A model generated the notes under the pieces. The model was not told the DNA's origin and searched no databases. It saw only the letters and a program-made list of their open reading frames with translations. This document shows positions 1 to 47,370 of a DNA stretch of 64,000 bases, piece after piece. This DNA comes from Macrostomum lignano (taxonomy: Eukaryota): assembly GCA_002269645.1 (NCBI GenBank), contig NIVC01003587.1:25452-89451 (forward strand). The letters are read 5' to 3'. Position 1 is the first letter of the stretch. The number at the start of each line of letters is the position of its first letter. A program made the position numbers and the translations under genes.

Positions 1-1052
1 TAAATACCTATGCTTTTTGTTTGAATATTTCAGCAAGACAATTTTTAAATGGATAAATTCTGTGATAGGTATTTCTTGAGAAAGACTTTTTTTGTCTCAA
101 ATCTTGTCTCAGTCCAAATCTCAAAATATAATAGCTCTAGACCAAAGACAAAGAAAGACCAAAAATTTAAGTCTATAAAGAGGTTACAACATTACAAATA
201 TATTTGAATTTACCTTAATGCCTAATTAATCTCTTTGTAGAAATTATAGAAATGGCAGCTATGTCTGATAATGTAAGACCTTATATAGACCTATCTGCCT
301 TATAAGCACACGCATACATGGTACTGTTGCTTTACATTTTAGCAATAAAAAGATTACCATAATCTCCAATGAAATTGATCAAATTGACTCCATATTAAGG
401 ACACAGTCATCTTCCATATACTAAAAATGAAAATCTTGCTTGTATGCTTGTATGTACGAAATCGATTATCTCCTGAATGGCTTGACCGATTTTCTTTGAA
501 CTTGCACTGTTCGATCAGAAATTTTTCTGTGACGGTATATGTGTCTTGGCTAAGAAATTGCTAAATGCTAAAGGAATGAAATATTAGAAAAAACATGCTT
601 TTTTGCAAAGGTCAAGCAAACTTTTTGACTTGAAATGCATTGTAAGAATGCTAGAGACAAAACTGACTGGTTGAATTCTGATTCTGAAATAGATTGCATC
701 ATAACTAAATTGTAACTCCAACTTGAATTGCGTCACAGTATTGAAAATGCAGTGTGGAAGCGTAGCACCAGACTTGATTTAGATTGAGTAACCATATTGT
801 TAACTGATACTGACTGACTGAGAAATTGATTATGTCATAACTGCTTCGTGTGATTTACTCTATGCTTGGATTTTAAAGTGTTGAATTATATAAGTGCTAA
901 ATTTCATGTTATCAAAACGATGAGAGCTAGCCTACAGGTAAACAGACTGAACTGCCAAATGCAGCGACAATGGTTTGAATTTTCATAGAGTGGAATTTTT
1001 GAATTAAAGCTTTTTAATGTCAGGAAAACTAAAAGACTTTAAAAAAAAGCCT

Positions 1053-4020
1053 CATGAAAAAATCATAGAAGCGTCATGTAAAAAATCATAGAAGCGTCAT
1101 GTAAAAATCATAGAAGCGTCATGTAAAAATCATAGAAGCATCATGTAAAAATCATAGAAGCGTCATATAAAAAATCATAGAAGCGTAATGTAAAATATCA
1201 TAAAAGCGTCATGTAAAAATTATAAAAACATCATGTAAAAATCATAGAAGTGTCATGTAAACAATCATAGAAATGTCATACAAACAATCATAGAAGCCTC
1301 ATAAAAAATCATAGAAGGGTCATGTAAACAATCAAAAGTGTCATATAAACAATCAAAGAAGTGTCATGTAACAAATCATAGAAGCGTAATGTAAAAATCA
1401 TAGAAGCGTTATGTAAAGAATCATAGAAGCGTCATAAAAAGTCATAGAAGAGTCATGTAAACAATCAAAGAAGCGTCACGAAAATATCATAGAGGCGTCA
1501 TGTAAAAATGATAGAAGCATCGTATAAAATATCATATAAGTGTCATGTAAAAAATCATAGAAGCGTCATATAAAATATCATAGAAGTGTCATGTAAAAAA
1601 TCATAGAAGCGTCATATAAAATATCATAGAAGTGTCATGTAAAAATCATAGAAGTGTCATGTAAAAAATCATAGAAGCATCATGAAAAATATCATAGAAG
1701 CATCATGTTAAAATCATAAAAGCGTAATTTAAAATATTATAGAAGCGTCATGTAAAAATTATAGAAACGTCATGTAAACAATCAAAGAAGTGTCATGTAA
1801 CAAATCATAGAAGCGTCATGTAAAAATCATAGAAGTGTTATGTAAAGAATCATAGAAGCGTCATAAAAAGTCATAGAAGAGTCATGTAAACAATCAAAGA
1901 AGCGTCATGAAAATATCATAGAAGCGTCATTTAAAAATGATAGAAGCATCATATAAAATATCATATAAGCGTCATGTAAAAATCATAGAAGTGTCATGTA
2001 AAAAATCATAGAAGCGTCATGAAAAATATCATAGAAGCGTCATGTTAAAATCATAGAAGCATAATGTAAAATATCATAGAAGCGTCATGTAAAAATTATA
2101 GAAACGTCATGTAAAAATCATAGAAGTGTCATGTAAACAATCATAGAAGTGTCATATAAACAATCATAGAAGTGTCATGTAAACAATCATAGAAACGTCA
2201 TACAAACAATCATAGAAGCATCATAAAAATTCATAGAAGCGTCATGTAAACAATCATAGAAGTGTCATGTAAACAATCATAGAAGTGTCATGTAAACAAT
2301 CATAGAAGTGTCATGTAAACAATCATAGAAGTGTCATGTAAACAATCATAGAAATGTCATGTAAAGAATCATAGAAGCGTCATAAAAAGTCATAGAAGCG
2401 TCATAAAAAGGCATAGAAGAGTCATGTAAACAATTATAGAAGCGTCATGGAAAATATCATAAGAGCGTCATGTAAAAATCATAGAAGCTTCATGTAAAAA
2501 TCATAGAAGCGTCATGTAAAAATCATAGAAGCGTCATGTAAAAATCATAGAAGCGTCATGTAAAAATCATAGAAGTGTCATGTAAAAATCATAGAAGAGT
2601 CATGTAAACAATCATAGAAGCGTCATGTAAAAATCATAGAAACGTCATCAAAAAATTTTAGAAAAGTCATGTAAAAATCATAGAAGTGTCATGTAAACAA
2701 TCAAAGAAGTGTCATGTAAAAAATCATAGAAGCGTAATGTAAAAATCATAGAAGCATTATGTAGAGAATCATAGAAGCATCATAGAAAGTCATAGAAGAG
2801 TCATGTAAACAATCAAAGAAGCGTCAAGGAAAATATCATAGAAGCGTCATGTAAAAATCATAGAAGCGTCATATAAAGTATCATAGAAGCGTCATGTAAA
2901 AATCGTAGAAGTGTCATGTAAACAATCATAGAAGTGTCATGTAAACAATCATAGAAACGTCATGTAAAGAATCATAGAAGCGTCATAAAAAGTCATAGAA
3001 GCGTTATAAAAAGTCATAGAAGAGTCATGTAAACAATTATAGAGGCGTCATTGAAAATATCATTGGAGCGTCATATAAAAATCATAGAAGCATCATGTAA
3101 AAATCATAGAAGCGTCATGTAAAAATCATAGAAGCGTCATGTAAAAATCATAGAAGCGTCATGTAAAAATCATAGAAGCATCATAAAAATTCATAGAAGT
3201 GTCATGTAAACAATCATAGAAGTGTCATGTAAAATATCATAGAAGTGTCATGTAAACAATCATAGAAACGTCATACAAACAATCATAGAAGCATCATGTA
3301 AAAATCATAGAAGCGTCATGTTGAAAATCATAGAAGCGTAATGTAAAATATCATAGAAGCGTCATGTAAAAATTATAGAAAAGTCTTGTAAAAATCATAG
3401 AAATGTCATGTAAACAATCATAGAAATGTCATACAAACAATCATAGAAGCCTCATAAAATATCATAGAAGCGTCATGTAAACAATCATAGAAGCGTCATA
3501 TAAGCAATCATAGAAGCGTCATATAAACAATCAAAGAAGTGTCATGTAACTAATTATAGAAGCGTAATGTAAAAATCATAGAAGCGTTATGTAAAGAATC
3601 ATAGAAGCGTCATAAAAAGTCATAGAAGAGTCATGTAAACAATCAAAGAAGTGTCATATAAAATATCATAAAAGCATCATGTAAAAAATCATAGAAGCAT
3701 CATGTAAAATATCATAGAAGCGTCATATAAAAATCATAGAAGTGTCATGTAACAAATCATAGAAGTGTTATGTAAAAATCATAGAAGCGTAATGTAAAAT
3801 ATCTTAGAAGCGTCATGTAAAAATTATAGAAACATCATGTAAAAATCATAGAAATGTCATGTAAAAATCATAGAAGTGTCATGTAAACAATCATAGAAGA
3901 GTCATGTAAACAATCATAGAAGTGTCATGTAAACAATCAGAAGTCTCACATAAAAATCATAGATCTCTCATGTAAAGAATCTTAGAAGTGTCATGAAAGA
4001 ATTGTAGAGGCGTCATGGAA
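1053..4020 (+). repeat. AT-rich satellite, 22-23 bp unit (CATGTAAAAATCATAGAAGCGT), ~130 units
   Basis: 22-bp period read directly (e.g. 3121 vs 3143); many variant units; edges approximate. Confidence 0.95.
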
Positions 4021-4029
4021 TAATAAAAA

Positions 4030-5110
4030 AGTGTCAAGTCAAAAATAAAAGAAGCATCATGTAAAACTGTGCTGTGACCCTTGAGGAGAATTTCTCTGAT
4101 ATCAAGGCTCATGGAGAAAAACTGAGATTTCTAAGATGTCAATCTAAAAGCCAGAAGCTACATGTAGTTTACTCAAACTTTTTATTACATTCTTTGTTGG
4201 CTTGCCATGGGACCCGCTGATAGAAGAAGCATCATGTAAAAAAAGAGGGGAATAGCTGAGATGTCTAGACTTGCGACGGGAATAGCTGAGATGTCAATAC
4301 TTGCGAGGGGAATAGCTGAGATGTCAAGACTTGCAAGGGAATAGCTGAGATGTCAAGACTTGCAAGGGGAATAGCTGAGATGTCAAGACTTGCGAGGGGA
4401 ATAGCTGAAATGTCAAGACTTGTGAGGGGAATAGCCGAGATGCCAAGACTCACAAGGGATTGCTGAGGTTATTGCAAAGAGAAACTGTAGTTTAAACATG
4501 TACAAGCATAGTTTATTCAAAATTAGAATAAAGCCTTGACAAAAAAGTGTCATGTCAGACATAAAAGAAGTGTCATTTAAAAAACGTCACATGAAACTGT
4601 GTGCTATGACTCTTGGGGAGAATTACTATTGATGTCAAAGCTTACAGGGGAATAGCTGCGATGTCAAGGCTCATGGGGGAATAACTGAGATGTTAAAGCT
4701 AAAGTCAGAAGCTAACATGTAGTTTATTCAAAACTTTTATTACATTTTTTGTTGGCTCCTCACAGGGGGGTGCGTCACTAATAGAAAAAGCGTCATGTAA
4801 AAATAAAAGAAGCATCATGTCTAAGTTAAGAGATTCATTTGGATATCCCTACAATATCGAGGCTTGCAGGGAATCGCTATAATGCTGTAGTGCTATAATA
4901 ACTCTTGGGGAGAATTACTGAACTGTCAATGCATTAGGGTTAGGGTTAAGGTAGAAGGTTAACAGATTTTTTAAGATTTCAAGGCTTATGGGGGGAATTG
5001 CTGAGATGTCAAGGCTTACAAGGGACTGCTGAGGTATTGCAAAGAGATGCTATATGTAGTTTATTAAAAAACTTGTATTGCATTTTTTGGCTCCCCAACG
5101 GGGGCGCTGA
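4030..5110 (+). repeat. Three diverged copies of a longer (~200-300 bp) repeat
   Basis: Motifs GTGCT..GAC/TCTTGGGGAGAATT and ATGTAGTTTATTCAAAACTTTTATTACATT..TTGGCT recur at ~4070-4200, ~4600-4760 and ~4890-5095. Confidence 0.6.
4247..4455 (+). repeat. 30-bp minisatellite (GGGAATAGCTGAGATGTCAAGACTTGCAAG), ~7 units
   Basis: Direct repeats; explains the 10-aa periodic ORF 4265..4453. Confidence 0.9.
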
Positions 5111-10419: not shown

Positions 10420-13400
10420 ATGCAATCAGCTGTCAGTGCTGAGCAGTTGGCTATAGACGAACCGGCAACTCCTATAGAAGAGGCAGACTTGCCCAGCAGT
10501 GAAGAGTCTGTGGATAATGCCGATCCAGCTGCTAAAGATGTAGATGAAGATGCCAATGAGGAGCATGAGGACACTGACAATGCTGCTGATGCTGATGAGT
10601 GCAAAGAGTCGCCCGAATGGCAGGTGAAGGCCTGTCCAGATTTTGCGGCAGCTTGCTCATTCCTTGGCCAGTTCGGATCGGACCTGGGCGTGACGCTGAC
10701 CTTCGCCCAGCTGGCGAAATGCGCGCTGTCGGGTCAGAATCCGCAGTCCAAGCACCATCACTCGTCGCCCAGTAAAAGCTGGATTAATTTGCACGTTCGT
10801 TTATTAAATCGTTTGCGCTATTGCGTCAAAGAGGACAAATGGGAGAATGGCTTGCGCAAATTTTGCTCAGCAGTTGATGCGGATACAGCATCAGCCTCCG
10901 CGGTTGCCTCAGCTCTTGGCGTTGTTGACGCAGCCGCCGCGGCGACAACGCCGCTGATGCTGTTGCTGGAGCCGGGCGGCTACGCCAGTTTGGGTTATGC
11001 GGAACGGCTGCGCATCTTTCGCAGCCTGTTGGAGTGCCAGTTTGATAGAAATGTCAAGCTGAAAGCCAGAACTAACGCTATTAAAGCGGAGGAGCTCAGG
11101 CAGAAACCCATTGGCCAAGACATGGCCGGCTGTCAGTACTGGCTGCTCACCGACTCCGAGTACAGCGTGCTGCTCTATAAAGAGGATTCCGAAGCTGACG
11201 ACTCCGCTAGGCTGACTCTGGAAGCTGACAGTGTGGAAGCTATTCGACAGTTGTTGGTTCAGCTGCGATCTTGGACCGATCCGCGAGCTGTGCTGGACAC
11301 TCTGAGAGCGTCGGCCTTGTCTGCCGCTCTCATCAGTGGCAGCGGCAGCAGCGGCAGCAGCGGCAGCAGCAGCAAAGATGCCACGCCGCCGCCGCAACCG
11401 CCACCAAAAGAGAATGGCGCAGCCGTGAGCAAACTTGAGACCGTGCCGGAGGATGATAAAGAAGAGGAAGCTAAGCTGGAGCCTGAGCCAGAAACAGCTG
11501 AGCCCGTTGCTAACCAAGCCAAGCCTGAACCGGTTAAGTCTGAAGACAATAACGAAGAGAAGGTCGACGTGAAACTTGAAGAAGAAAATATCAAATCGGA
11601 AGAAGAATTGTCAACTCCAGTTAACAAGGGTCGCAAAGGCAAAGCGGATTTATCTGTGGCTGATGAGGCGGAGCAGCCAGCTGCCGCCACTGACGATAGC
11701 GGGCTTCGTCGATCGTCGCGCGTGCGCAAGCAGGTGACGCCGTTCGTCATCCAGCAGGAGCCGGCCAGCGCTAAGAAGCGAGGCAAACTGGCAACCGCTG
11801 ACAGCGGCGAAGATCAAGGCGACAGTGAGAAGACGGCTTCGCCAACTGCCAAAGCTTCTGCTAAACGGCAGAAACAGCAGCGAAAGTCCGACGGTATGAG
11901 CTACTGAATGTGTCTGTTTTTGTAGATTTCTAATATTCTATTTTATTCAGTGATGTGTAGCTTGAAACCCGTCATTCGTTTCACAAAGTCGCATTTGTCT
12001 GGGGTCTCTTATTTCATATTTTACCTGTGTTACCTGCAGCAGATTTTGGGCGCTACTTGGCCCAGGTTTTCAACGGGGAAGTTTTGAGGTCATGCAATTT
12101 GGAGCTTGTGCAATCATTATACTCTACTTCATAAGTAGTGCAGTACGCATATTTATACTATTTTCTCACCCTTCAACAGACAAGGCGCGCAAGCTCAAAC
12201 TAGCCTCCAAATCGCCGAGCAAAGCTAATAAAAAGCTCGCTAAAAAGCGGGCCAATAAGAAATTGGCCAAAGCCGCCGCCAACAAGAAGGCTAACGGTGT
12301 CGGCGTTGGCGCTAAAAAGCGACGCGGCGGCAATCCGTGGGAGCGCGGCGCCAGCAGCTCGGAGGAGGACGAAGAAGCCGAGGCGGATTTTATTCAGGCT
12401 TTGGACGCGGCCGATGAAGAGGAGGACGATGAAGGCGCGGATGCTGGAGCCATGTCTGACGACAGCTGGACTGACAGGCCAGAGTCCGACTTTGAGGTAG
12501 CTTTTTTGCTTGAAGTGTGAATCACTTGTATCCTGACTCTCAAGTCCTGAAGTTAGAAATCCAGATCTTCTTGCATATCCAAAGTGGGATTTCTACCGCA
12601 ATCCCCAAGTAGGGAGTCCTTCTCTAATCCTCAATTTAAGTTTTTCCCAGATACCCAAGTTATGGATTTCCACTCAAATCCTCAGATTGGGATTCCTGCT
12701 CAAATCCTCAGATAGGGGTTCCTGCTCAAATCCTCAGATTGGGATTCCTGCTCAAATCCTCAGATTGGGATTCCTGCTCAAATCCTCAGATTGGGATTCC
12801 TGCTCAAATCCTCAGATTGGGATTCCTGCTCAAATCCTCAGATTGGGATTCCTGCTCAAATCCTCAGATTGGGATTCCTGCTCAAATCCTCAGATTGGGA
12901 TTCCTGCTCAAATCCTCAGATTGGGATTCCTGCTATATGGACGCCGGTGGCTGCAATTGTGGGATTTTTTGCTGATGTAGCTTGAAATCCCATTTATGTA
13001 GATAGAAATCCCAAATATCCCATTGATGTAGCCTGACATCCCAAATATCCCACTGATGTAGCTTGAAATCCCAAATCCCATTGATGCAGCTTGAAATCCC
13101 AAATCCCATTGATGCAGCTTGAAATCCCAAATCCCATTGATGTAGTCTGACATCCCAAATATCCCATTGATGTAGTCTGACATCCCAAATATCCCATTGA
13201 TGTAGTCTGACATCCCAAATATCCCACTGATGTAGCTGGAAAACCCAAATATCCCATTGATGTAGCTTGAAATCCCAAATCCCATAGATGTAGTCTGACA
13301 TCTCAAAAATCCCATTGATGTAGCTTTAAATCCCAAATATCCCTAGATTTCTATTAAACTCGTTCATCTTTGATTTAAAGCTGGTTAAAACTATGCGATC

Positions 13401-16400
13401 CCAACTGCTCTCCCTCGCCAAAGGACGCGGCCCTGTCCGAGTCGGACTCAGAACACGAGTGCCGCGGTCGGAACTATCTCCGTCAGCGCAAACGCCAGCA
13501 ACAGCTGCTGGCCGAGGCGGCCGCCGGCCCGCCTTGTCCCTGCGTCCGCTGCGGCAAAGAAGACCTGCCGGAGTGGCTGCTGTTGTGCGATAGTTGCGAT
13601 GTAGCTTGGCACGCCATGTGCTTGAGGCCTCCGCTGTTTCTCATACCTACTGGCGATTGGTTTTGCCCCGTTTGTCAGCATAAGAGCCTCTGCGACGCTT
13701 TAGAAAGCAAAGTGACGGAGTTGGAGCAGCAGCAGAAGCAGCGCGTTGCTAAACAGAGAATGCAGGTAATTTCTGCTTTCTGTAGTTTTCTTTCGATACA
13801 TATCGGCAGAAAATTGATTTCGTTGCTCCCATCTCATCTCGGTTTGATTTTATTTGCTTTTCGATACATATCGTTAGTTAATTGGTTTAGTCGCTCCCGT
13901 TTTAGTTTGATTTTATTTGGTTTTTTTCGATGCATATCCCATTTTAGCCGCTCCCGTCTCGGTTTGATTCTCTTTGCTTTTTGTTAGCAAGAAATCAGAT
14001 TTAATTTGGCTCTGGTGCATCGGGTAGATTTTTTATTTGTATTTCGATACATATCGGCATTGTAAAAAATATCTGCTAACTCAACAGGAGCGTCTCAGCT
14101 ACGTCAGCATCTCAGTTGGCAACATCATTGAGAGCTCGCGGGCCGGGCGCGCAGGCGGCGGCTTCGCTCACTACACCGAGGGCGGCTCCGATATTGAGGG
14201 CGCGTCCGACTCCCGGTCCGGTTCCGGTAGTTTCGGCTCTTCCGGTAGCGGAAGTGGCTCGGGTTCCGGTAGTAGCGAAGAGGAATCTTCGGACGAAGAG
14301 GCGTAAGTTACTCAGTGCTTTTTTTAGAGTTTGAGGATAATTGGGATTTTGAATCCAAATTATTATAATTTTGGGACTTGAACTTTCTCCATTGCATACC
14401 GGTATTGTGAGCGTTCAAAGCTTTCTCGATGGAATATTTACGATTTCGGACTTCGATACGACATATGGGATTTCCATCTACGTCAATGGGATATTTTGGA
14501 TTTCTATCTACGTCAATGGGATGTTTGGGATTTCTATCAACGTCAATGGGATATTTGAGATGTCAGGCTACATAAATGGGATATTTGGGATATCAGGCTG
14601 CATCAATGGGATTTGGGATTTCAAGCTACCTCAATGGGATTTGGGATTTCAAGCTACATCAATGGGATATTTGGGATTTCAAGCTACATCAGTTGGATAT
14701 TTGGGATGTCAGACTACATCAATGGGATATTTGGGATGTCAGACTACATCTATGGGATTTGGGATTTCAAGCTACATCAATGGGATATTTGGGATGTCAG
14801 ACTACATCTATGGGATTTGGGATTTCAAGCTACATCAATGGGATATTTGGGATGTCAGACTACATCAATGGGATTTGGGATTTCAAGCTACATCAATGGG
14901 ATATTTGGGATGTCGGACTACATCTATGGGATTTGGGATTTCAAGCTACATCAATGGGATATTTGGGATTTCAAGCTACATCAATGGGATATTTGGGATG
15001 TCAGACTAAATCTATGGGATTTGGGATTTCAAGCTACATCAGTGGGATATTTGGGATGTCAGGCTACATCAGTGGGATATTTGGGATTTCTATCTACATA
15101 AATGGGATTTCAAGCTACATCAGCAAAAAATCCCACAATTGCAGCCACCGGCGTCCAACCCGCCAGTCGGCCCGCACAGCCAACGTGAACTACCGTTTCG
15201 AAAACTACGACGCCATGATTAAAGAGGCCATCGAAGAGGACGACAAGTACCGCCTAGTCAAGGAGAACCCGGAGGCGGCAGCCGAAGCGGCAGCCGAGGC
15301 CCGGCGAGCCCGCAAGCGGCCTGGAGGCGGCAAAGACATGGAGAGCATCCTGGGCCCCGACTGGGACAAGAAGAAGCCGCCGTCGGCTGTTGAGGAGCCG
15401 CAGCCCAGCGCCAAGCCGGCAGCCGCGGATGCCCAGGAAGTCGCCACCGAAGACAGCCAAGAAGACGCAGCGGAAGCTGCTACAGCGGCGTCAAACGAAG
15501 AAGGCGACAATGACGGCGAGGAAAGCGACGTCGAAGGCGAGGGCGGCCGACCTGCACCGCCGGCTGCCACGGCGGCGGCCAAGCGGAAGCGGAAGCGCCT
15601 GGCCAAGCTGGGCGACACGGACAGCGAGGCCAACTCGGACGCTGACGAGCACCCGTCCGATGACGATTTCAAGCCGCCAAGCTCGGCCGACACCGACGAA
15701 GATGACGACGATGAAGCTGGACGAGGCCGAGGCAACTCGTCCGATGACTCGTACAGCGGCGCCGAGTCCGAGGAGTTGAGCAGCGACGCGAGCTGGAGGC
15801 CGTCTGGCTTGGCCATCAGTTCGCGTCGGCAGTCGTCCAGGCTGAGAGCGGCGGCGGCGGCATCGTCAAGGTGAGAATTCCGCTATTTTAGATGATTTTT
15901 TTCATGGCCGATATGTTGCGAAAAAACTTTAAATTTGCATATAATAAGTGGCTTTATGGCGAACTTGAAACAGCCGATATGTAGCGTATAACTATTTAAA
16001 TTGGTATAATATGTGGCTTTATAGCGAACTTATAATGGCCGGTATGTAGCGTATAACTATTTAGATTATCATAATGTGCAATTTAAATTAAAATTTAAAG
16101 TTAAAAGGGCCTGTAATTTGACTGCCATTCATATTAGTTGGAATTGCACGGCTTTAAGGTTAAAGTTCAATTAACCGATATGTAGCGTAAAATACTTTCC
16201 AGGGCAGAATTCGTTATAGTTATATTATAACTACTATTTCCTATTCGCCAGGCACAAGCGGTCGTCGCACGGCAGCAAAAGCAGAAAAGACAAGAAGCAC
16301 AAAAGGAGCAGCCGGCATCGGAGTGGCAGCGCAGGAGGCGGCGGCCGTCACAGTCGTAAGCGTCGGCGTAGACGCGAAGACGACGATGCGGAGGACGATG

Positions 16401-18010
16401 AGGACGGAGACGACTGGCGACCCGGCGGAGGCGGCGAAGGTCGACGTCGCTCCCGGCACCCGCCGCCGGCTAAGCGAGGCCGACGGCGAGGACGCGGCCG
16501 CAACGAATACGACTCAGATGACGACATTGAGGAGTCTGAGGAGGATCAGTCCGAGGATGAGGCGCGGCGCCCGACTCGGCGAGCTGCAGCCCGGCGGGTC
16601 GTGTTCCAGGAGGACGAGGAAGACGAGGAAGAAGAAGAAGAAGAAAATGAAGCAGAGGCGGCACAGAAGCCGGGAAAAGCTAAAGAAGAAAATGAGGAAA
16701 AAGCTGAAGCAGAAGACGAGGCAGACGAAGACGCTCATGGCCGGCCAAAGTTGCAGATTGCTGGCAGGCAAAAGCAGCTGCAGAAGCGTCGAGCCGCTTG
16801 TCTTGAAGACAGCGACGAAGAGTGGAAAGGGTCAGATGAAGAGGAAGAAGAAGAGGAAGAGGAAGAAGAGGAGGAAGCAGAGGCGGAAGGGGAGGAAGAG
16901 GAACCGCCTCCAGCAAAGGAAACGGTTGCTAAGCGGCAAAAGCTAGCCACGATTGATGATCGAAATAAAGAAAAAGAAGAAGACAATGAGAAACAACAAA
17001 CAGCAGCAGAAGAGAAGGCCGATGCCGAGACGGTAGCAGAGTCTAAACAGACAGTAGAGTCGAAAGAGGCTGAAATAGTTGATGAAGCTAAGAATAAAGC
17101 CATTGAAGAAGAAGTGGCTGAGACAGCGGTTGCTACTGCTCCAGCGGAAGCTGAAGACAATCCGGCCGGAGAGTTTGACAATGCGGAAGACGAGGAGCTG
17201 CCGGATAAGGAGGCCGAGCTGCGCGAAGCCGAGCTGCGGATGGCGCAGGAGGCGGCCAGCTCGATGCCGCAGCAGCCGCCTGCTGTCCAGCGGCTGGAAG
17301 CGCCAGCAGCAGAAGCAGCCGAGCCTGTCCCCACTGCGGCAGCAAAGCCAGCAGCAGCAGCAACAACAAGCAGAACTCAGCAGCAAAGGAAGCAGAAACA
17401 GCAGAAACAGTTGCAGAAGCAGCAACAACAGCAGCAGCAGCAATCTATTCAACAGCCTTCAATACCTTCGCAGCCAATGCAACCGCCAGTGTCTACAGTT
17501 GGTCACGTGATGCCGCCTCAGGCGCCGCCGCATCCGCAGTACATGCCGCAGCAGCAGCAGACAGTCTTGCCGCAACACCAGCCGCACATCGTGTCCACAA
17601 CAGCTGCCTGCCCGCCGCCGCCACCACCGCCGCAGCAGCCAATACCTCCCGATATTAGAGAGCTCTACCTGCCGTCCTGCACTTACGGCGGGCCCAGCTA
17701 CCAGCCTCAGCATCCGCAGCCATATCCGGTGTACACAGCTTATCAGCCACAGCCGCAGCTTCCTCCCATGCAGGCCGGTAGCATGCTTGCCGAGCTGAAC
17801 GACTTGACACCTCCGCCGCCGCCTCCACCAGCGCCGCAGATGCTGCCTCCCATGCCTGCTGTAGTCAGCAGCAGCAGTAGCGCCAACAGTGCCGGAGGAG
17901 CAGCTGGCGGGACGCCGTTCTATATTGAGTCTCTGTTGCATCAGCAGCAGCCGGCGCCAACTTATCCGCCTGCCACCGGGGCTTATGGACAGCAGCATCA
18001 GCCGTTTTAA
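10420..18010 (+). CDS. RSF1: Remodeling and spacing factor 1 (RSF1)-like; DDT/WHIM N-terminus, PHD finger, acidic and Gln/Pro-rich C-terminus; ~1610 aa
   Basis: Exons 10420-11893, 12180-12496, 13424-13765, 14088-14302, 15145-15870, 16252-18010; all GT-AG with matching phases; total 4833 nt = 1611 codons. Motifs CPDFAAACSFL, WENGLRKFC, LLECQFDRN, PIGQD..GCQYW, PHD CxxC..LLLCDSCDVAWHAMCLRPPL..GDWFCPVC, ERLSYVSISVGNII, VNYRFENYDAMIKEAIEED resemble human RSF1 as recalled. Start codon and exon-3 acceptor less certain. Confidence 0.9.
12675..12934 (+). repeat. 26-bp minisatellite (CTCAAATCCTCAGATTGGGATTCCTG), ~10 units, RSF1 intron 2
   Basis: Near-perfect direct repeats. Confidence 0.95.
12938..13345 (-). 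repeat. Inverted copy of RSF1 intron-4 array plus exon-5 acceptor (left arm)
   Basis: Reverse complement of ~14750-15157, including TTGCAG|CCACCGGCGTCCA. Confidence 0.92.
14470..15125 (+). repeat. 28/30-bp minisatellite (GGGAT[AT]TTGGGAT[GT]TCA..CTACATCAAT), RSF1 intron 4 (right arm of inverted repeat)
   Basis: Mixed 28- and 30-bp units ending ~20 nt before the exon-5 acceptor. Confidence 0.92.
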
Positions 18011-18134
18011 AGTAACAAGACAGATGGCGCACTGTTTTCTGTTTGACATTGTTGTTTGGTTTGTAAGTTTATTGATACTATATATTGTATATGCGTTTAT
18101 GCTAATGTTTATAATTGTAATTAAGTCTCGGCTG

Positions 18135-18918
18135 TGTCAGTTAAGAACCAACTGTGTCAGTAAGAACCAATTTTGTCAGTTGGGAATCAGCTGTGTCAGT
18201 TGAGAATCAGCTGTGTCAGTTGAGAACCAGCTGTGTCAGTTGAGAACCAGCTGTGTCAGTTGAGAATCAACTGTGTCAGTTGAGAATCAGCTGTGTCAGT
18301 TAAGAATCAGCTGTGTCAGTTAAGAATCAGCTGTGTCAGTTGAGAACCAGCTGTGTCAGTTGAGAACCAGCTGTGTCAGTTGAGAACCAGCTGTGTCAGT
18401 TGAGAATCAGCTGTGTCAGTTGAGAATCAGCTGTGTCAGTTAAGAATCAGCTGTGTCAGTTAAGAATCAGCTGTGTCAGTTAAGAATCAGCTGTGTCAGT
18501 TTAGAATCAGCTGTGTCAGTTGAGAATCAGCTGTGTCAGTTGAGAACCAGCTGTGTCAGTTGAGAACCAGCTGTGTCAGTTGAGAATCAACTGTGTCAGT
18601 TGAGAATCAGCTGTGTCAGTTAAGAATCAGCTGTGTCAGTTAAGAATCAGCTGTGTCAGTTTAGAATCAGCTGTGTCAGTTGAGAACCCTGTGTCAGTTA
18701 AGAATCAGCTGTGTCAGTTGGGAATCAGCTGTGTCAGTTGAGAATCAGCTGTGTCAGTTGAGAATCAGCTGTGTCAGTTAAGAATCAGCTGTGTCAGTTA
18801 AGAATCAGCTGTGTCAGTTGGGAATCAGCTGTGTCAGTTGAGAATCAGCTGTGTCAGTTGAGAATCAGCTGTGTCAGTTAAGAACCAGTTGTGTCAGTTG
18901 AGAACCAACTGTGTCAGT
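18135..18918 (+). repeat. 20-bp minisatellite (GTTGAGAATCAGCTGTGTCA), ~39 units, downstream of RSF1 stop
   Basis: 20-bp period; degenerate units at the left edge. Confidence 0.95.
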
Positions 18919-20162: not shown

Positions 20163-20234
20163 TTCCCTGACCGGGAGTCGAACCCGGGCCACCTGGGTGA
20201 AAACCAGGGATCCTAACCGCTAGACCATCAGGGA
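20163..20234 (-). tRNA. tRNA-Glu (TTC)
   Basis: 72 nt TCCCTGATGGTCTAGCGGTTAGGATCCCTGGTTTTCACCCAGGTGGCCCGGGTTCGACTCCCGGTCAGGGAA; acceptor stem TCCCTGA/TCAGGGA, anticodon stem CCTGG/CCAGG with loop TT-TTC-AC, B box GGTTCGACTCC. Confidence 0.96.
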
Positions 20235-20822: not shown

Positions 20823-20894
20823 TTCCCTGACCGGGAGTCGAACCCGGGCCGCCTGGGTGAGAGCCAGGAATCCTAACCGCTAGACCATCAGGGA
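20823..20894 (-). tRNA. tRNA-Glu (CTC)
   Basis: 72 nt, 4 differences from the TTC copy; anticodon loop CT-CTC-AC. Confidence 0.96.
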
Positions 20895-21119
20895 CTGATA
20901 CTAAGGCGACGCGATGGGGGGCAAACGGCAACTTAAACCGAGGGACTCTGTGACATCCGCCAGCTTTTCGTTTTTCGAGGAGGCTCTTCCCCCTCCTTTT
21001 CGTTCTGGCCTGGCGTGGAAGCGGCTAGCTTCCTCGTCTTGGTCTGCTGGTGGGGGACGGATCCCCCCTGCTGCTTTTTTGCGGGGCAGGTGGCTGCTAA
21101 GTAGTTGGCTGCTGGCTAA

Positions 21120-26204
<5,085 letters not shown>

Positions 26205-27241
26205 TCCTTGTGCTCTTTTACCTTGGGGTTGCGATAGGGGCCTCGCGGCCTATTCGCGGCGCCTGCGCCCCCCGTCAGTAGTAAGTAAGTAAGGCGACGC
26301 GATTGTATCCATAAAATACTTGTAAGCATATAACACCTTTTAGTAATGCCCCAGGCGGCCAGGGCCCAGTCCTAGTCAGAACTGTACAAATACATGTAGC
26401 TAAGGAAAAAACTGCATCGAGTAGACCGAAAATACGAATGCTAGTGTTGTGGTTGCTAATTTCTATTGCTAGTGTTTATATAATATCACACTATCGATCG
26501 ACTTCGATCGATTGACGATCGGCTGTCCTCTCCATTTGACCTCCAGCGACCCCCAATCCCATTGATCGTCCTCGATTCACGTCGATTGACTTCAATCGAC
26601 CCTATTTATTCTGCAAATTGATTCGACCCCCATAAAACAACATTGACCCCTGTCCAAACAAAACTAGAAGTGCTCCGAAAGAGTGCAATTATGATTATTG
26701 ATTGGCTGAGCAACGGCCTAACGACGGCCATCGGATTTTTCCTTAGCAAACGTACGCAAAGCATGCATGGGTAATAAATGGTATTATTTACTTATTGTAC
26801 CATAGACATTTTGCCTAAGCTACGCTTTAAGAGTGAGGGATAGGGGCTTGGGAGCCCCACTTTGGGGCTCGATCCCCACCATAGACTATTTTAGCAGCAG
26901 TCGCAAAAATTTGTTTTCATGAGCTAACTGCTAAATAAAGCATGATGCAGCTTTCCCGGTGCCCGGCCACGATTTCAAACATTTTGCCGTATCGATAAAA
27001 AGAGCATTGCTCACAAGAAAATTCTCAGTCTCTGAGCACGAGCGCAGTTGCTCTAACTTGATAATATTCTCCGAGTGCGAGCAAAATGCTCAAGAGGCAG
27101 AGGATATGAATAAAGAAAATCATCAAGCTCTGAGAATTTCCTCCGTGACCAGAGCAAATCCGCAGCCACTTTAAACCATAGACAAGACGTCTTCCCACTT
27201 GATTCTATTGACCTTTGCGTGGATCTGAAGCATATATACCA

Positions 27242-28871: not shown

Positions 28872-31800
28872 TCAGGCGGGACTGTCCTGAGCTGGCATGA
28901 TCACCGCCGCCTGCTTCTGCTCCAGCGCAGCACCGAACGGTACGCCTCGTTTCGGCACGTACTCGCCTACGCGGGGCACCATGGTGATGCAGTCGATGAT
29001 TGGGCAGACAGAGGCGCACAGGGTGCAGCCGGTGCAGTCGTCTGTCACTCGTGGCAGATGCGTCTCGGCGTCAAACTCGATGGCCTGGCGGTGGTGGCGG
29101 CGGGGGTGGCAGTGCAGGGAATGAGTCACCCTAGACAACTCTCTGTAAGAGTGCACCGTAGACAACTCTAACCTCTGTAAGACACCCTAGACAACTCTAA
29201 CCTCTGTAAGACACCCTAGACAACTCTAACCTCTGTAAGACACCCTAGACAACTCTAACCTCTGTAAGACACCCTAGACAACTCTAACCTCTGTAAGAGT
29301 GCACCCTAGACAACTCTAACCTCTGTAAGAGTGCACCCTAGACAACTCTAACCTCTGTAAGAGTGCACCCTAGACAACTCTAACCTCTGTAAGAGTGCAC
29401 CCTAGACAACTCTAACCTCTGTAAGAGTGCACCCTAGACAACTCTAACCTCTGTAAGACACCCTAGACAACTCTAATCTCTGTAAGACACCCTAGACAAC
29501 TCTAACCTCTGTAAGACACCCTAGACAACTCTAACCTCTGTAAGACACCCTAGACAACTCTAATCTCTGTAAGACACCCTAGACAACTCTAACCTCTGTA
29601 AGACACCCTAGACAACTCTAACCTCTGTAAGACACCCTAGACAACTCTAACCTCTGTAAGACACCCTAGACAACTCTAACCTCTGTAAGAGTGCACCCTA
29701 GACAACTCTAACCTCTGTAAGAGTGCACCCTAGACAACTTAACCTGATTACCTGATATCCCGAATCGTTGCAAGTCATGTAGCACTTGCCGCAGTTGATG
29801 CACAAATCGTCGTTAACCAGAGCCACCACCTGCTGTTTATTATCGAGGTCGTAGTAGTTTCCAACCAGGCCGACACTGGCGCCAACAATGTCTGAAACTT
29901 TCGGAACTGGCTTCACGACCGGCCGCTGCCTCTGGGCCAAACCGGTTGAAGCCGGGTCAGGCTTGAGTAGGTCGCGAGTTCGAAGCAGCTCGTGCTCAAG
30001 CGCTTCCCTGCGCTGCTTGTAGGGCCCAAAGGCGGGCAGGGATTGGCCGGTAGCCAGCAGCGACTTGCCGCGCTGGTGCACCGGCGTTGGCGGGCTCTGG
30101 CCGGTCCAGTCCGCCAGGCCTGTTCCAGTTGAATGGGATAAATGGAGATTTAAGGTTTTCATTGGGCCTCGCTTCAGTCGTTAGAACAGCTGTGTTGTGT
30201 GTGCACTGGAGACACGTGGTCGAAAATGCCAAAACTGTTTGGCGTCAGGCAAGGCCAGCAGTCTAGTTCTTCCAGGTGGATTAATTAAAGTTGCTAGAGT
30301 CTCCGAATTGGTTGCTAGGGTCTTCGAATTGGTTGCTAGGGTCTTCGAATTGGTTGCTAGGGTCTTCGAATTGGTTGCTAGGGTCTTCGAATTGGTTGCT
30401 AGGGTCTTCGAATTGGTTGCTATGGTCTCGTATTTTGGTTGCTATGGTCTCGTATTTTGGTTGCTACGGTCTCGTACTTTGGTTGCTAGGGTCTCGTGTT
30501 TTTGTTGCCAGGGTCTCGTATTTTGGTTGCTCGGGTCTTTTTATCTTGGTCGCTAGGGTCATCGTATTTTGGTTGCAACTCTTCGACTTGGTTGCTAGGG
30601 TCTCGAATTGGGTTGTTAGGTGTGCCTAATGGTTAGCTAAGAGCACCAAATATGTACAAAAGCGATTCTAGTAAAATCAACGAAAATGTGTACAATCTCA
30701 CAAATAAAAAAATTAGACATCGGGCAAGAATTAGTTTGTAGTTTCTCAATAAACCTACTTGCAGTAGTCAAGCCAGACAACTAGACCCCATCAGAAATTG
30801 ACTCCCCCAATTTAATCATTCATCAATTTGACGGCAACATGCGCGAGCTGATAAGAGCGAGCAGCCGGTGCGAATCATAAAATTCGCGTAATAAAGTTGA
30901 TAAGAATTTTTTACAACTTTCGCCCATCGGTTCTAAATTGCAAGCTACAGAGCAGACAACCGGGAGGGGGTAGTAGCCGCCTGGATTAAAGATAAAAAAT
31001 ATGATTAAAGCTGGAAAAGTACGCGGTTTAAGACTTGAAAAGACACTGGATCAAGGACCATCTATTATTGGAAACTATTGGAAATATACTCGTAGTATTA
31101 TTGGAAATGGCCAATATCCACTTCTCTCTAATCTCCTCTCCTTTCGCCTCTCCTCTCCCGTTGTCTCCTTACGTATCCTTTATTCTCTTGCCTCTCCTTT
31201 CTCCTATCTCTCTTCTCTATCTCCTCTCTCCCCTCGGGCCCTCTCTCCCCATGCAACAGTTTCCCCACCTGGCCCTTGAGGTAAAATACTTTGCCGCCCC
31301 TCTGAAGTAATTAACTCTACTCGATAGCCCTATTAACCGATGAAGCAGCCAAAACGGCAAGATGCTGAATCAGACTGGGATTTCCAGCTCATCAGATGAT
31401 GAATGGTCATTTAGCTTTACGGCGAAACCGACCTTTGTCTAGAAATACTCGTGATTTAATCTACTTTCCTTTGACCCGTTTTGCCGAGAAAAATCTGCAC
31501 TACAAAAATCAGATTCTGGGGAACGTACTAAAATGAGGGCGTATAGGTTTCTCACTGGGACTGCAGCGATCATTTCTAAGAAAATGGAGTGTAGCCTGAC
31601 ATTAGACACCAGACATTAGACACCAGACATTAGACACCAGACATTAGACACCAGACATTAGACACCAGACATTAGACATTAGACATTAGACACTAGACAT
31701 TAGACACCAGACATTAGACACCGGAGATTAGACACCAGACATTAGACACCGGACATTAGACACCAGACATTAGACACTAGACATTAGACACCAGACATTA

Positions 31801-45897: not shown

Positions 45898-46424
45898 GGC
45901 TGCTTCCGGTAAATTGTATATAGCTAGCAATGCTAATTCTAAGTTGCATTCACGCAGTCCAGGGTTGCTGTTGCGCCCAGGGGAGACAAGTCAGGTGATA
46001 GGCTGAACTCTATAATTTATAGACACCTAAGGCAGTGATATTATGCAGCTGATAAGCGCTGGGGCCCTGGGGAGGGGGGAGGCTCGCCCCCTAAGCTCGT
46101 GTACAAGCTCTGCGTGTAGTTTAGTCAGTGCCTCACCTTATCTCGGGCAGAGAGATACCTAGTATTAGCGCCATGGAGTTCATTTGTTTGTACAATTAGC
46201 GACAAGTAAAGTGGTGAAGTGATAGTTTTAGTGACAGAAAATGAGTTTATTTTAAACTGACAAGCAACTAACTCGTAGGTTCGCCACACAGTGCAGTCAC
46301 TACACGGGACGAAATTCTATGTACGAAGCATTTTAAGTACATCGTCACATTTAATCACGTGAAATTTAACTAGTTCACTATGCAAATACGTGGATCTGGT
46401 CTATGATCTGTGGTCTAATTTTCT

Positions 46425-47370
46425 GCATATTGCACTGTCTAATGTTGTTGGTTCAAGTTTCTGCATATTGCTCTGTCTAATGTTGTTGGTTCAAGTTTCT
46501 GCATATTGCTCTGTCTAATGTTGTTGGTTCAAGTTTCTGCCTATCGCTCTGTCTAATGTTGTTGGTTCAAGTTTCTGCATATTGCTCTGTCTAATGTTGT
46601 TGGTTCAAGTTTCTGCCTATTGTTCTGTCTAATGTTGTTGGTTCAAGTTTCTGCATATTGTTCTGTCTAATGTTGTTGGTTCAAGATTCTGCCTATTGTT
46701 CTGTCTAATGTTGTTGGTTCAAGTTTCTGCCTATTGTTCTGTCTAATGTTGTTGGTTCAAGATTCTGCCTATTGTTCTGTCTAATGTTGTTGGTTCAAGT
46801 TTCTGCCTATCGCTCTGTCTAATGTTGTTGGTTCAAGATTCTGCCTATTGTTCTGTCTAATGTTGTTGGTTCAAGTTTCTGCCTATTGTTCTGTCTAATG
46901 TTGTTGGTTCAAGTTTCTGCCTATTGTTCTGTCTAATGTTGTTGGTTCAAGTTTCTGCCTATTGTTCTGTCTAATGTTGTTGGTTCAAGATTCTGCCTAT
47001 TGTTCTGTCTAATGTTGTTGGTTCAAGTTTCTGCCTATTGTTCTGTCTAATGTTGTTGGTTCAAGATTCTGCCTATTGTTCTGTCTAATGTTGTTGGTTC
47101 AAGATTCTGCCTATTGTTCTGTCTAATGTTGTTGGTTCAAGATTCTGCCTATTGTTCTGTCTAATGTTGTTGGTTCAAGTTTCTGCCAATCGCTCTGTCT
47201 AATGTTGTTGGTTCAAGTTTCTGCCAATCGCTCTGTCTAATGTTTTTGGTTCAAGTTTCTGCCTATCGCACTGTCTAATGTTGTTGGTTCAAGTTTCTGC
47301 CAATCGCTCTGTCTAATGTTGTTGGTTCAAGTTTCTGCCTATCGCACTGTCTAATGGTGTTGGTCAAATG
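46425..47370 (+). repeat. 38-bp minisatellite (CTGTCTAATGTTGTTGGTTCAAGTTTCTGCCTATTGTT), ~25 units, upstream of DPYD
   Basis: 38-bp period (46441 vs 46479). Confidence 0.95.

What the first reader, a model, noticed from the sequence alone, without database searches (positions are those of the whole stretch)
12938..15157. Inverted duplication of the RSF1 intron-4/exon-5 junction brackets the PHD-finger exon: built-in dsRNA switch or circRNA driver
Seen: 12938-~13345 (intron 2) is the reverse complement of the end of intron 4. It includes the non-repetitive acceptor AAAAAATCCCACAATTGCAG and the first 13 nt of exon 5 (CCACCGGCGTCCA). I see about one mismatch in the terminal ~140 bp. The arms enclose exon 3 (PHD finger) and exon 4 (557 nt together). 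Established: inverted intronic repeats promote back-splicing and exon skipping and are ADAR/Dicer substrates. Inference: the pre-mRNA can fold a ~400-bp duplex that masks the exon-5 3' splice site and loops out exons 3-4. Joining exon 2 (phase 0) to exon 5 (phase 2) would frameshift, so the outcomes would be an exon 3-4 circRNA and/or NMD-coupled control of a chromatin remodeller. The inverted copy includes unique splice-site sequence, so it is a local inversion-duplication, not a dispersed repeat.
Basis: partly seen in the sequence, partly recalled or inferred. Interest (0 to 1): 0.72.

Follow-up and report, generated by a model that had tools for sequence, protein, structure and literature searches.

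The report
Inverted intron duplication bracketing two exons
In the flatworm Macrostomum lignano, about 400 bases from the end of one intron of an RSF1-like chromatin gene (including the splice acceptor and 13 bases of the next exon) were copied backwards into an upstream intron, so the pre-mRNA could form a long double-stranded stem around the PHD-finger exons; the structure is real, but any effect on splicing is untested.

Summary
Window 12938-13343 is the reverse complement of 14664-15157: 390/404 aligned bases match, there are four gaps (30, 28, 2 and 30 nt), and the outermost 144 nt match at 143/144. The match includes the unique acceptor and the first 13 nt of exon 5. Both arms are built from a 28/30-bp minisatellite that occurs nowhere else in the 64 kb. 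The window is from Macrostomum lignano (assembly Mlig_3_7). A duplicate contig about 99% identical carries the same right arm and the inner 126 nt of the left arm, so a read or assembly artefact is very unlikely. A third copy, about 93% identical, has the right arm and acceptor; its upstream intron could not be reached. RNA folding predicts a duplex of about 390 bp (-706 kcal/mol) that loops out exons 3-4 (557 nt) and buries the exon-5 acceptor. Skipping exons 3-4 gives a stop after 25 codons. I read it as a young, local inverted duplication in a minisatellite-rich, partly polyploid genome. It has the geometry of known circRNA-promoting intronic inverted repeats. No RNA data could be reached, so "switch" remains speculation. 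It is a new member of a known kind and of modest interest.

The parts
12180..12496 (+). Exon 2 of the RSF1-like gene; it ends in phase 0 with a GT donor at 12497
   Evidence: Reading frame and splice sites
12673..12934 (.). A different 26-bp minisatellite (10 copies, 98% matches) that ends 3 nt before the outer end of the left arm; probable insertion site
   Evidence: TRF; sequence. Similarity to the 30-bp unit is not significant
12938..12950 (-). Inverted copy of the first 13 nt of exon 5 (CCACCGGCGTCCA)
   Evidence: Exact match
12951..12986 (-). Inverted copy of the unique 3' end of intron 4 (acceptor AG, A-run, last partial repeat unit)
12987..13343 (-). Left-arm minisatellite, about 12 units of 28/30 bp, in inverted orientation
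   Evidence: TRF; unit matches; alignment. The inner 126 nt is also present in the duplicate contig L002
13344..13423 (+). Last 80 nt of intron 2, with the exon-3 acceptor, between the left arm and exon 3
13424..13765 (+). Exon 3, 342 nt, PHD finger
   Evidence: Pfam PF00628, E=1e-9; PHD matches in PDB
13766..14087 (+). Intron 3, with 57-68-bp repeats (TTTCGATACATATCGGCA motif); copy number differs in L002
14088..14302 (+). Exon 4, 215 nt, ends in phase 2
14303..14465 (+). Unique first 163 nt of intron 4, between the exon-4 donor and the right arm
   Evidence: identical in L002
14466..15108 (+). Right-arm minisatellite, about 22 units of 28/30 bp; the source array
   Evidence: TRF. L002 is 690/692 identical over the right arm 14466-15157. 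A shorter version is present in the third copy L003
15109..15144 (+). Unique 3' end of intron 4, with acceptor ...AAAAAATCCCACAATTGCAG
   Evidence: conserved in L002 and L003
15145..15157 (+). First 13 nt of exon 5 (coding for A-H-R-R-P), paired with 12938-12950 in the predicted duplex
15145..15870 (+). Exon 5 (726 nt)
   Evidence: Frame and splice sites; gap-free alignment to P0002 across the junction

Best explanation
This is a real, evolutionarily young, local inverted duplication in the RSF1-like gene of Macrostomum lignano.

**Origin (inferred).** A segment made of the distal part of the intron-4 minisatellite, the unique branch and acceptor region, and the first 13 nt of exon 5 was copied in reverse into intron 2. 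It landed at the edge of another minisatellite, 80 nt upstream of exon 3. The likely route is a replication or repair template switch (a templated inverted insertion). Afterwards the two arrays gained and lost whole repeat units.

**RNA consequence (computed, not observed).** Both arms lie in the same pre-mRNA. They can form a stem of about 390 bp that closes a loop holding exons 3-4 and sequesters the exon-5 acceptor.

**Most likely effect (inferred).** When the stem forms before introns 2 and 4 are removed, that transcript is diverted to a non-productive fate. The options are an exon 3-4 circle by back-splicing of 14302 to 13424, exon 3-4 skipping with a premature stop, or a retained, edited or diced pre-mRNA. 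The rest are spliced normally. I regard this as a tolerated by-product of minisatellite turnover in a genome with redundant gene copies, not an evolved switch.
For: **Structure**
- 390/404 identity overall, 143/144 in the terminal block, and an exact 33-mer that includes the acceptor and 13 exonic nt.
- It is the only large inverted repeat in the window.
- The repeat-unit family is confined to the two arms.

**Direction of copying**
- The 13 nt are coding in exon 5. A homologue aligns without a gap across the junction. The left copy is antisense and intronic.

**Not an artefact**
- The organism is M. lignano: the DPYD ORF is 100% identical to BOX15_Mlig007577g1.
- The window equals contig NIVC01003587.1 (100% over 12 kb).
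- A separate contig, NIVC01001727.1 (L002), carries the right arm (690/692) and the inner 126 nt of the left arm (124/126) at the same positions.
- The arms differ by unit-sized indels and enclose 1.1 kb of non-inverted unique sequence. A fold-back read would not produce that.

**Age**
- The arms differ by 0.7% in the terminal 144 nt and 3.5% overall.
- The window differs from L002 by about 0.3% outside intron 3.
- The window differs from the third copy L003 by about 6-7%.

**RNA folding**
- duplexfold gives -705.9 kcal/mol. In the cofold, 394 of the 406 left-arm nt pair with the right arm.
- The MFE structure of 12497-15300 keeps 390 left-right pairs, including the AG and the 13 exon-5 nt.
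- Geometry: the arms lie 80 nt upstream of the exon-3 acceptor and 163 nt downstream of the exon-4 donor.
- Skipping gives a stop after 25 codons.

**Genome context**
- 15% of the genome is simple and tandem repeats, and 180 Mb lies in duplicated blocks at least 95% identical (PMC5730564).
- TRF reports 65 tandem-repeat rows across this window (overlapping rows can describe the same array), nearly all arrays locus-specific.
Against: - No RNA evidence of any kind could be reached: no back-splice or skip junction, no editing, no small RNAs.
- The outer junction of the left arm, the part with the 13 exonic nt, is seen in one contig only. In L002 it lies just beyond the stretch that could be fetched.
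- Both contigs come from the same PacBio data set and the same assembler.
- The rest of the genome could not be scanned, so a dispersed family with this unit is not formally excluded.
- Full-length coding genes are on record at the equivalent position on the two sister contigs. If intron 2 is removed co-transcriptionally before the right arm is made, 1.1-1.8 kb later, the stem may rarely form.
- The proposed origin by template switching has no clear microhomology at the outer junction. At most there is 5 nt (ATCTA) at the inner one.
Confidence: 0.55

Rival explanations
1. The duplication is real but inert at the RNA level. Intron 2 is spliced co-transcriptionally, or helicases and RNA-binding proteins prevent pairing, so the stem essentially never forms. 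The element is a neutral structural variant with no measurable effect.
For: - The right arm is transcribed 1.1-1.8 kb after the left arm.
- Full-length coding genes (1628 and 1588 aa) are on record at the equivalent position on the sister contigs.
- The structure looks young.
- The gene exists in at least three copies, so selection on any one copy is relaxed (PMC5730564).
Against: - A near-perfect 390-bp complement with many possible pairing registers nucleates very easily.
- By established knowledge of circRNA minigene work, 30-40 nt of flanking complementarity is enough to drive back-splicing in other animals.
Confidence: 0.28
2. One reading: an evolved dsRNA switch. The stem is maintained by selection to tune output of the chromatin remodeller, through circRNA production and/or skipping coupled to NMD.
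For: - The terminal 144 nt are fully pairable: 143 Watson-Crick pairs plus one G-U.
- The stem covers the acceptor itself.
- The structure is kept in two gene copies.
- The geometry is typical of circRNA-promoting repeats.
Against: - High complementarity is equally explained by youth. The arm-to-arm divergence is similar to the divergence between the two contigs.
- No compensatory changes could be assessed.
- There is no conservation evidence beyond two ~99% identical copies.
- There are no RNA data.
- The arms are ordinary minisatellite of the kind that fills every intron here.
Confidence: 0.1
3. The arms belong to a mobile element. Either it is a foldback-type transposon whose long terminal inverted repeats are made of tandem subrepeats, or there were two insertions of a minisatellite-bearing element in opposite orientation. 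In that case the exon-5 acceptor and first 13 nt would be element-derived.
For: - Foldback elements do have inverted terminal arrays of short tandem repeats (established knowledge).
- Both arms end in the same unique sequence.
Against: - There is no target-site duplication at the outer ends: the flanks are ...CTGCTATA on the left and ACCCGCCAG... on the right.
- The interior is host sequence with two conserved coding exons.
- The 13 nt are in frame and align with a homologue.
- No other copies occur in the window; in ~110 kb of related loci exact-unit matches and the stretch of L003 that was read lie only at the equivalent positions.
Confidence: 0.04
4. Assembly or read artefact: a chimeric or fold-back PacBio read, or a Canu mis-join in repeats.
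For: - The region is highly repetitive.
- The assembly comes from early, error-prone PacBio reads (PMC5730564).
- The outer junction is seen in a single contig.
Against: - The same arrangement occurs on a second contig that differs by point substitutions and by intron-3 repeat number.
- The arms are not identical: 14 mismatches and four indels.
- The arms are separated by 1.1 kb of unique, correctly oriented exons.
- The assembly was polished with Illumina reads.
Confidence: 0.03

Closest known systems
Intronic reverse-complementary matches that promote back-splicing (inverted Alu pairs in human; DNAREP1 repeats at Drosophila laccase2; complementary matches in C. elegans introns)
   Same: Inverted complementary sequences sit in the two introns that flank the looped-out exons, close to the relevant splice sites (80 and 163 nt). 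Pairing across the introns is predicted to dominate the fold.
   Different: - The arms are not dispersed transposon copies. They are a locus-specific minisatellite plus a copy of the gene's own acceptor and 13 exonic nt.
- The stem also buries the downstream 3' splice site.
- No circle has been observed.
Mouse Sry locus, where long inverted repeats of local origin flank the single exon and give a circular transcript
   Same: A locus-specific inverted duplication, not a transposon family, brackets exon sequence in one transcript.
   Different: The Sry arms are tens of kb long and flank the whole gene. Here the arms are 0.4-0.7 kb, lie inside two introns, and bracket two internal coding exons.
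Drosophila hairpin-RNA (hpRNA) loci that yield endo-siRNAs
   Same: An inverted duplication of a gene fragment gives a long, near-perfect hairpin. Flatworms have Dicer-2 orthologues, and RNAi-signal amplification genes were found only in M. lignano among the flatworms surveyed (PMC5594548).
   Different: The arms are almost wholly intronic. Only 13 nt match mature mRNA, which is too short for siRNA targeting. The hairpin lies inside its own parent gene, and small RNAs were not examined.
ADAR editing-site complementary sequences (for example the intronic sequence that pairs with the GluA2 Q/R exon)
   Same: An intronic inverted copy pairs with exon sequence next to a splice site. The paired exon stretch holds two adenosines: 15147 in a His codon and 15157 in the third position of a Pro codon.
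   Different: It lies upstream rather than in the adjacent downstream intron. It is part of a 390-bp perfect duplex, which would attract promiscuous rather than site-specific editing. No editing data exist. ADARs are documented in planarians (PMC8797187) and were not checked in M. lignano.
Foldback transposons
   Same: Long inverted arms composed of short tandem subrepeats with unique outer ends.
   Different: No target-site duplication, host exons inside, and no other copies seen.
Templated inverted insertions from replication template switching or repair synthesis (FoSTeS/MMBIR-type events)
   Same: A short nearby segment is copied in reverse orientation into a site 1-2 kb away, with both breakpoints at or next to tandem repeats.
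   Different: The mechanism is inferred from the end product only. Microhomology at the junctions is weak or absent.

Membership tests
circRNA-promoting intronic inverted repeats | Complementary sequences in inverted orientation in the introns on both sides of the circularised exon(s) | tested here: met
   left arm in intron 2 and right arm in intron 4, 96.5% over 404 nt
circRNA-promoting intronic inverted repeats | Pairing across the flanking introns outcompetes pairing within each intron | tested here: met
   390 left-right pairs in the MFE fold of 12497-15300. No partner for either arm exists within its own intron. This is thermodynamic prediction only.
circRNA-promoting intronic inverted repeats | A back-splice junction (exon-4 donor 14302 joined to exon-3 acceptor 13424) is detected in RNA | not testable with these tools
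   No RNA-seq access. A library search for papers holding both 'Macrostomum' and 'circular RNA' listed five, none with Macrostomum in title or abstract.
Foldback transposon or MITE | Target-site duplication flanking the outer ends | tested here: not met
   the outer flanks CTGCTATA| and |ACCCGCCAG share nothing
Foldback transposon or MITE | Multiple dispersed copies in the genome | tested here: inconclusive
   None elsewhere in the 64 kb window; in ~110 kb of related loci exact-unit matches and the stretch of L003 that was read lie only at the equivalent positions. The whole genome is not searchable here.
Foldback transposon or MITE | The interior is element sequence, not host exons | tested here: not met
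   The interior holds the PHD exon and exon 4 of the host gene
hpRNA / endo-siRNA hairpin locus | Long, near-perfect hairpin from an inverted duplication of a gene fragment | tested here: met
hpRNA / endo-siRNA hairpin locus | Arm sequence matches mature target mRNA over at least ~21 nt | tested here: not met
   Only 13 exonic nt are in the arms
hpRNA / endo-siRNA hairpin locus | 20-23-nt small RNAs from both arms | not testable with these tools
   No small-RNA data reachable
ADAR editing-site complementary sequence | Intronic sequence base-pairs with an exon stretch that contains the edited adenosine | tested here: met
   15145-15157 pairs with 12950-12938. The adenosines are at 15147 and 15157.
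ADAR editing-site complementary sequence | A-to-I (A-to-G) change seen in cDNA but not in DNA | not testable with these tools
   No RNA data
RSF1 (remodeling and spacing factor 1) orthologue | PHD finger followed by a conserved post-PHD segment and long acidic/basic tracts | tested here: met
   PHD: Pfam. Post-PHD colinearity with the insect protein P0002: E=6e-36. That protein is itself unnamed.
RSF1 (remodeling and spacing factor 1) orthologue | N-terminal DDT/WHIM-type region, and best reciprocal match to a named RSF1 | tested here: inconclusive
   - No Pfam family in the N-terminal 491 aa.
- No homologues found for the N-terminal region.
- PDB matches cover the PHD finger only.

The most novel reading that the evidence does not exclude
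The hairpin is a working autoregulatory device of the RSF1-like gene. When the ~390-bp stem forms, it shuts the exon-5 acceptor and releases an exon 3-4 (PHD-finger) circle. The stem is also edited or diced. M. lignano is the one flatworm reported with RNAi-amplification genes, so arm-derived siRNAs could be extended by an RNA-dependent RNA polymerase into exon 5 and silence all gene copies. Alternatively, ADAR could recode the first full codon of exon 5 (His to Arg at 15147). That would be a gene carrying its own dsRNA trigger, built from a copy of its own splice site.
Probability: 0.07. Interest if true: 0.6.

Novelty: new member of a known kind. Interest (0 to 1): 0.3.

Why it matters
If the stem acts in vivo, this is a clean natural test case for intronic complementarity in splicing. 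It has near-perfect arms, a known origin and known polarity. The animal can be made transgenic, is sensitive to RNAi, and carries sister gene copies that may lack one arm as built-in controls. It would show how a single local rearrangement can create circRNA or exon-skipping potential, and mask a splice site, without any transposon. A library search turned up no circRNA study of this flatworm group. If the stem does nothing, the locus still shows how minisatellite-rich introns generate inverted templated duplications, and how polyploid redundancy lets them persist.

Tried and rejected
- **Reaching the outer end of the left arm in the sister contigs.** L002 stops 126 nt into the left arm and L003 stops inside exon 4, because of the 10-kb flank limit.
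- **Exact-ORF look-ups across the left arm, exon 3 and exon 5.** These were meant to find independent read assemblies. None are on record.
- **Scan of JGI metagenome contigs for the 33-mer.** No match.
- **Protein searches for the gene's own annotated product or transcripts.**
  - The exon 3-5 query gave only two distant homologues.
  - The N-terminal query gave none.
  - The exhaustive search with exon 5 gave none.
  - So no transcript-level check of isoforms was possible.
- **Common origin of the neighbouring 26-bp minisatellite and the 30-bp arm unit.** The similarity is not significant: 38 of 500 shuffles score as well.
- **Fold-back read artefact.** Rejected on geometry and on the second contig.
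- **Foldback transposon.** Rejected for lack of a target-site duplication and because host exons lie inside.
- **Alternative exon-5 acceptors at 15166 and 15178.** Both are out of frame, by reading the sequence.
- **Rfam and tRNA scans.** Nothing in the region.

Full report
**1. What is in the sequence**

The stretch 12938-13104 is the reverse complement of 14991-15157 (167 nt, 96%).

The 33-mer AAAAAATCCCACAATTGCAG|CCACCGGCGTCCA is present exactly twice in the 64 kb, once on each strand, at 12938-12970 and 15125-15157. None were expected by chance.

Most of each arm is a minisatellite of 28/30-bp units (consensus TGGGATTTCAAGCTACATCAATGGGATATT). There are about 12 units on the left (12987-13343) and about 22 on the right (14466-15108). 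Units of this family occur only in these two blocks, all minus-strand on the left and all plus-strand on the right. This is the only sizeable inverted repeat in the whole window.

When unit-sized gaps are allowed, the left arm 12938-13343 aligns to 14664-15157 with 390/404 identities and four gaps of 30, 28, 2 and 30 nt. The outermost block is 143/144. Its one difference (T at 13023, G at 15072) still pairs as G-U in RNA.

**2. Gene model**

The frames and GT-AG sites give this model:

| Exon | Coordinates | Note |
|---|---|---|
| 1 | 10420-11893 | |
| 2 | 12180-12496 | ends in phase 0 |
| 3 | 13424-13765 | 342 nt |
| 4 | 14088-14302 | 215 nt |
| 5 | 15145-15870 | |
| 6 | 16252-18010 | |

- The product is 1610 aa.
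- Exon 3 is a PHD finger (Pfam PF00628, E=1e-9; only PHD matches in the PDB).
- Joining exon 2 to exon 5 reads PPASNPPVGPHSQRELPFRKLRRHD and then a stop (frame 0).
- The exon-5 start at 15145 is supported by a gap-free alignment across the exon 4/5 junction. SSEEESSDEEAHRRPTRQSARTANVNYRF aligns to SSEEESSEEEPVYQLRQRKAATNLTYRF of an insect protein (E=6e-36). The next two AG sites downstream are out of frame.
- The 13 nt shared by the arms are therefore genuine coding sequence in the right arm. The left arm, antisense and intronic, is the derived copy.
- The 'RSF1' name is plausible but weakly tested. Nothing beyond the PHD finger is recognised by Pfam, and the N-terminal region has no detectable homologues.

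**3. Organism and independent copies**

A large single exon at 40553-42883 (minus strand) encodes dihydropyrimidine dehydrogenase. It is 100% identical to a Macrostomum lignano protein.

That protein is encoded on two contigs of assembly Mlig_3_7.

- **L001 (NIVC01003587.1).** It is 100% identical to the window over 12 kb, so it is the window's own contig.
- **L002 (NIVC01001727.1).** This is a duplicate locus.
  - It reaches back to window position 13218.
  - It shows the same layout: the inner 126 nt of the left arm (124/126), the 80-nt spacer, exon 3 (340/342), intron 3 with a different repeat number, exon 4, the 163-nt unique part of intron 4, the right arm (690/692) and exon 5.
- **L003 (NIVC01000070.1).** This third copy was found through a cluster member of the same enzyme.
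  - It is about 93% identical.
  - It shows the end of exon 4, a shorter right array (about 15 units) and the same acceptor. It has one synonymous change at the first base of exon 5.
  - Its upstream intron lies beyond the retrievable stretch.

The genome paper explains the copies. The sequenced DV1 line has extra large chromosomes and 180 Mb of duplicated blocks at least 95% identical. Simple and tandem repeats make up 15% of the genome. The assembly is Canu on PacBio reads, polished with Illumina reads (PMC5730564).

**4. Artefact or real?**

A fold-back or missed-adapter read gives a perfect palindrome around a single point. Here the arms differ by 14 substitutions and four indels. They are 1.1 kb apart, with correctly oriented unique exons between them. 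The left arm is joined on its far side to a different minisatellite and then to exon 2.

The same arrangement sits on a second contig that differs by point changes and by intron-3 repeat number. I put the artefact reading at about 3%. The remaining weakness is that the outer junction, the piece with the exon fragment, is seen on one contig only.

**5. Transposon or local event?**

- There is no target-site duplication at the outer ends.
- The interior is host exons.
- The 13 nt are in-frame coding sequence.
- No further copies occur in the window; in ~110 kb of related loci, exact-unit matches and the stretch of L003 that was read lie only at the equivalent positions.
- TRF reports 65 tandem-repeat rows across the window (overlapping rows can describe the same array), and nearly all arrays are locus-specific. 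Arrays in this genome therefore arise locally.

The simplest history is a templated inverted insertion. The copied segment was the distal intron-4 array plus the acceptor region plus 13 nt of exon 5. It landed at the 3' edge of the 26-bp array in intron 2. That step is inferred. Microhomology is absent at the outer junction and is at most 5 nt at the inner one.

**6. Age**

- Arm-to-arm divergence is 0.7% in the terminal 144 nt and 3.5% overall. The overall figure is inflated by unit turnover.
- The window and L002 differ by about 0.3% outside intron 3.
- The window and L003 differ by about 6-7%.
- The single terminal mismatch looks derived in the right arm. The left arm and the nearest L003 unit share CAAT, while both near-identical right arms have CAGT. 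Unit homology is not certain here.

The event, or the last conversion between arms, therefore predates the window/L002 split. It is probably younger than the split from the L003-type copy. That copy may well lack the left arm, and this is a direct, cheap test.

**7. What the RNA could do**

Both arms are on the sense strand of one pre-mRNA.

- ViennaRNA gives -705.9 kcal/mol for the inter-arm duplex. In the cofold, 394 of the 406 left-arm nucleotides pair with the right arm.
- The minimum-energy fold of the 2.8-kb stretch 12497-15300 keeps 390 left-right pairs. These include the acceptor AG (15143-15144) and all 13 exon-5 nucleotides.
- The stem base lies 80 nt from the exon-3 acceptor. The exon-4 donor is 163 nt from the start of the right array.

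This is the arrangement known to favour back-splicing, and it also hides the exon-5 3' splice site. These are computed properties, not observations.

Against a large effect:
- The right arm is transcribed 1.1-1.8 kb after the left arm, so intron 2 may often be gone first.
- Full-length coding genes (1628 and 1588 aa) are on record at the equivalent position on L002 and L003.

Flatworms have Dicer-2 orthologues, and RNAi-amplification genes were reported only in M. lignano (PMC5594548). ADARs that restrain dsRNA responses are documented in planarians (PMC8797187). So enzymes that act on long dsRNA are reported in flatworms, though ADAR was not checked in M. lignano. A library search for 'Macrostomum' together with 'circular RNA' listed five papers, none with Macrostomum in title or abstract.

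**8. Verdict**

The functional half (switch, circRNA driver, NMD control) is untested.

I estimate about 55% that the stem diverts a measurable fraction of transcripts as a by-product. I give about 28% that it is inert and about 10% that it is a selected regulator. Small remainders go to the transposon and artefact readings.

It is a new member of a known kind, namely inverted intronic complements flanking exons. Its unusual and useful feature is that one arm is a copy of the gene's own splice acceptor and exon start. Interest is 0.3.

Noticed in passing
window 14042-14070 and 15895-15923 (also 13788-13807, 13847-13873, 15973-16001): A second, short inverted relation. The intron-3 repeat (TTTCGATACATATCGGCA...) and the intron-5 65-bp repeat (GCCGATATGTAGCG...) are reverse complements over 29 nt at 83%. 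The local score exceeds all 500 shuffles, and the duplex energy is -33 kcal/mol. The motif CTACATATCGGC has 6 hits against 0.17 expected. The pair lies 18 nt upstream of exon 4 and 24 nt downstream of exon 5, so exons 4-5 are also bracketed.
   Followed up: partly
window 20916-26289: A non-LTR retrotransposon of about 5.4 kb lies between the RSF1-like gene and DPYD. Its ORFs at 21270-22388, 22388-23236 and 23404-25983 were read as a retrotransposon from their translations, without a domain search. It is absent from the duplicate contig L002, whose flanks abut at 28751/28764. A second copy at 5995-8922 matches it closely wherever their ORF translations overlap. This is an insertion difference between recently duplicated loci.
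   Followed up: partly
window 20163-20234 and 20823-20894, minus strand: Two tRNA-Glu genes (anticodons TTC and CTC) lie just downstream of the RSF1-like gene.
   Followed up: no
whole window, e.g. 1047-4066, 18131-18918, 31598-34842, 39200-40456, 46420-47364, 50764-51944: TRF reports 65 tandem-repeat rows (overlapping rows can describe the same array). Unit sizes are mostly 13-42 bp and arrays reach 3 kb. They fill introns and spacers, and nearly every array is a different, locus-specific family. This fits the published figure of 15% simple and tandem repeats.
   Followed up: no
window 40553-42883, minus strand (with the last coding part near 29698-30162): Dihydropyrimidine dehydrogenase, with a single 776-aa exon. 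The protein is 100% identical on two contigs, and a third near-identical copy exists. There are therefore at least three copies of this whole neighbourhood in the DV1 assembly.
   Followed up: partly
L002 35178-35634 versus window 13766-14087; L003 37616-37676 and 37010: - Between gene copies, intron 3 differs in the number of its ~60-bp repeats.
- The ~93% copy has a 3-nt deletion at the end of exon 4.
- The ~93% copy also has a synonymous C-to-G change at the first base of exon 5.
- The left arm in the window carries the C state.
   Followed up: partly
window 52836-53570, plus strand: A single-exon BTB/KCTD-type gene of 244 aa. A 244-aa gene with BTB_2 and H1_KCTD8_12_16 Pfam hits is on record in L002, on the same side of DPYD.
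   Followed up: no
window 13344-13360 and 12540-12670: Just inside the left arm, the plus strand reads TAGATTTCTATTAAAC. This resembles the right-arm unit variant GGGATTTCTATCTAC in direct orientation. Similar direct-oriented fragments (GGGATTTCTACC, TGGATTTCCACTC) lie further upstream in intron 2. They could be remnants of older units or chance matches.
   Followed up: no
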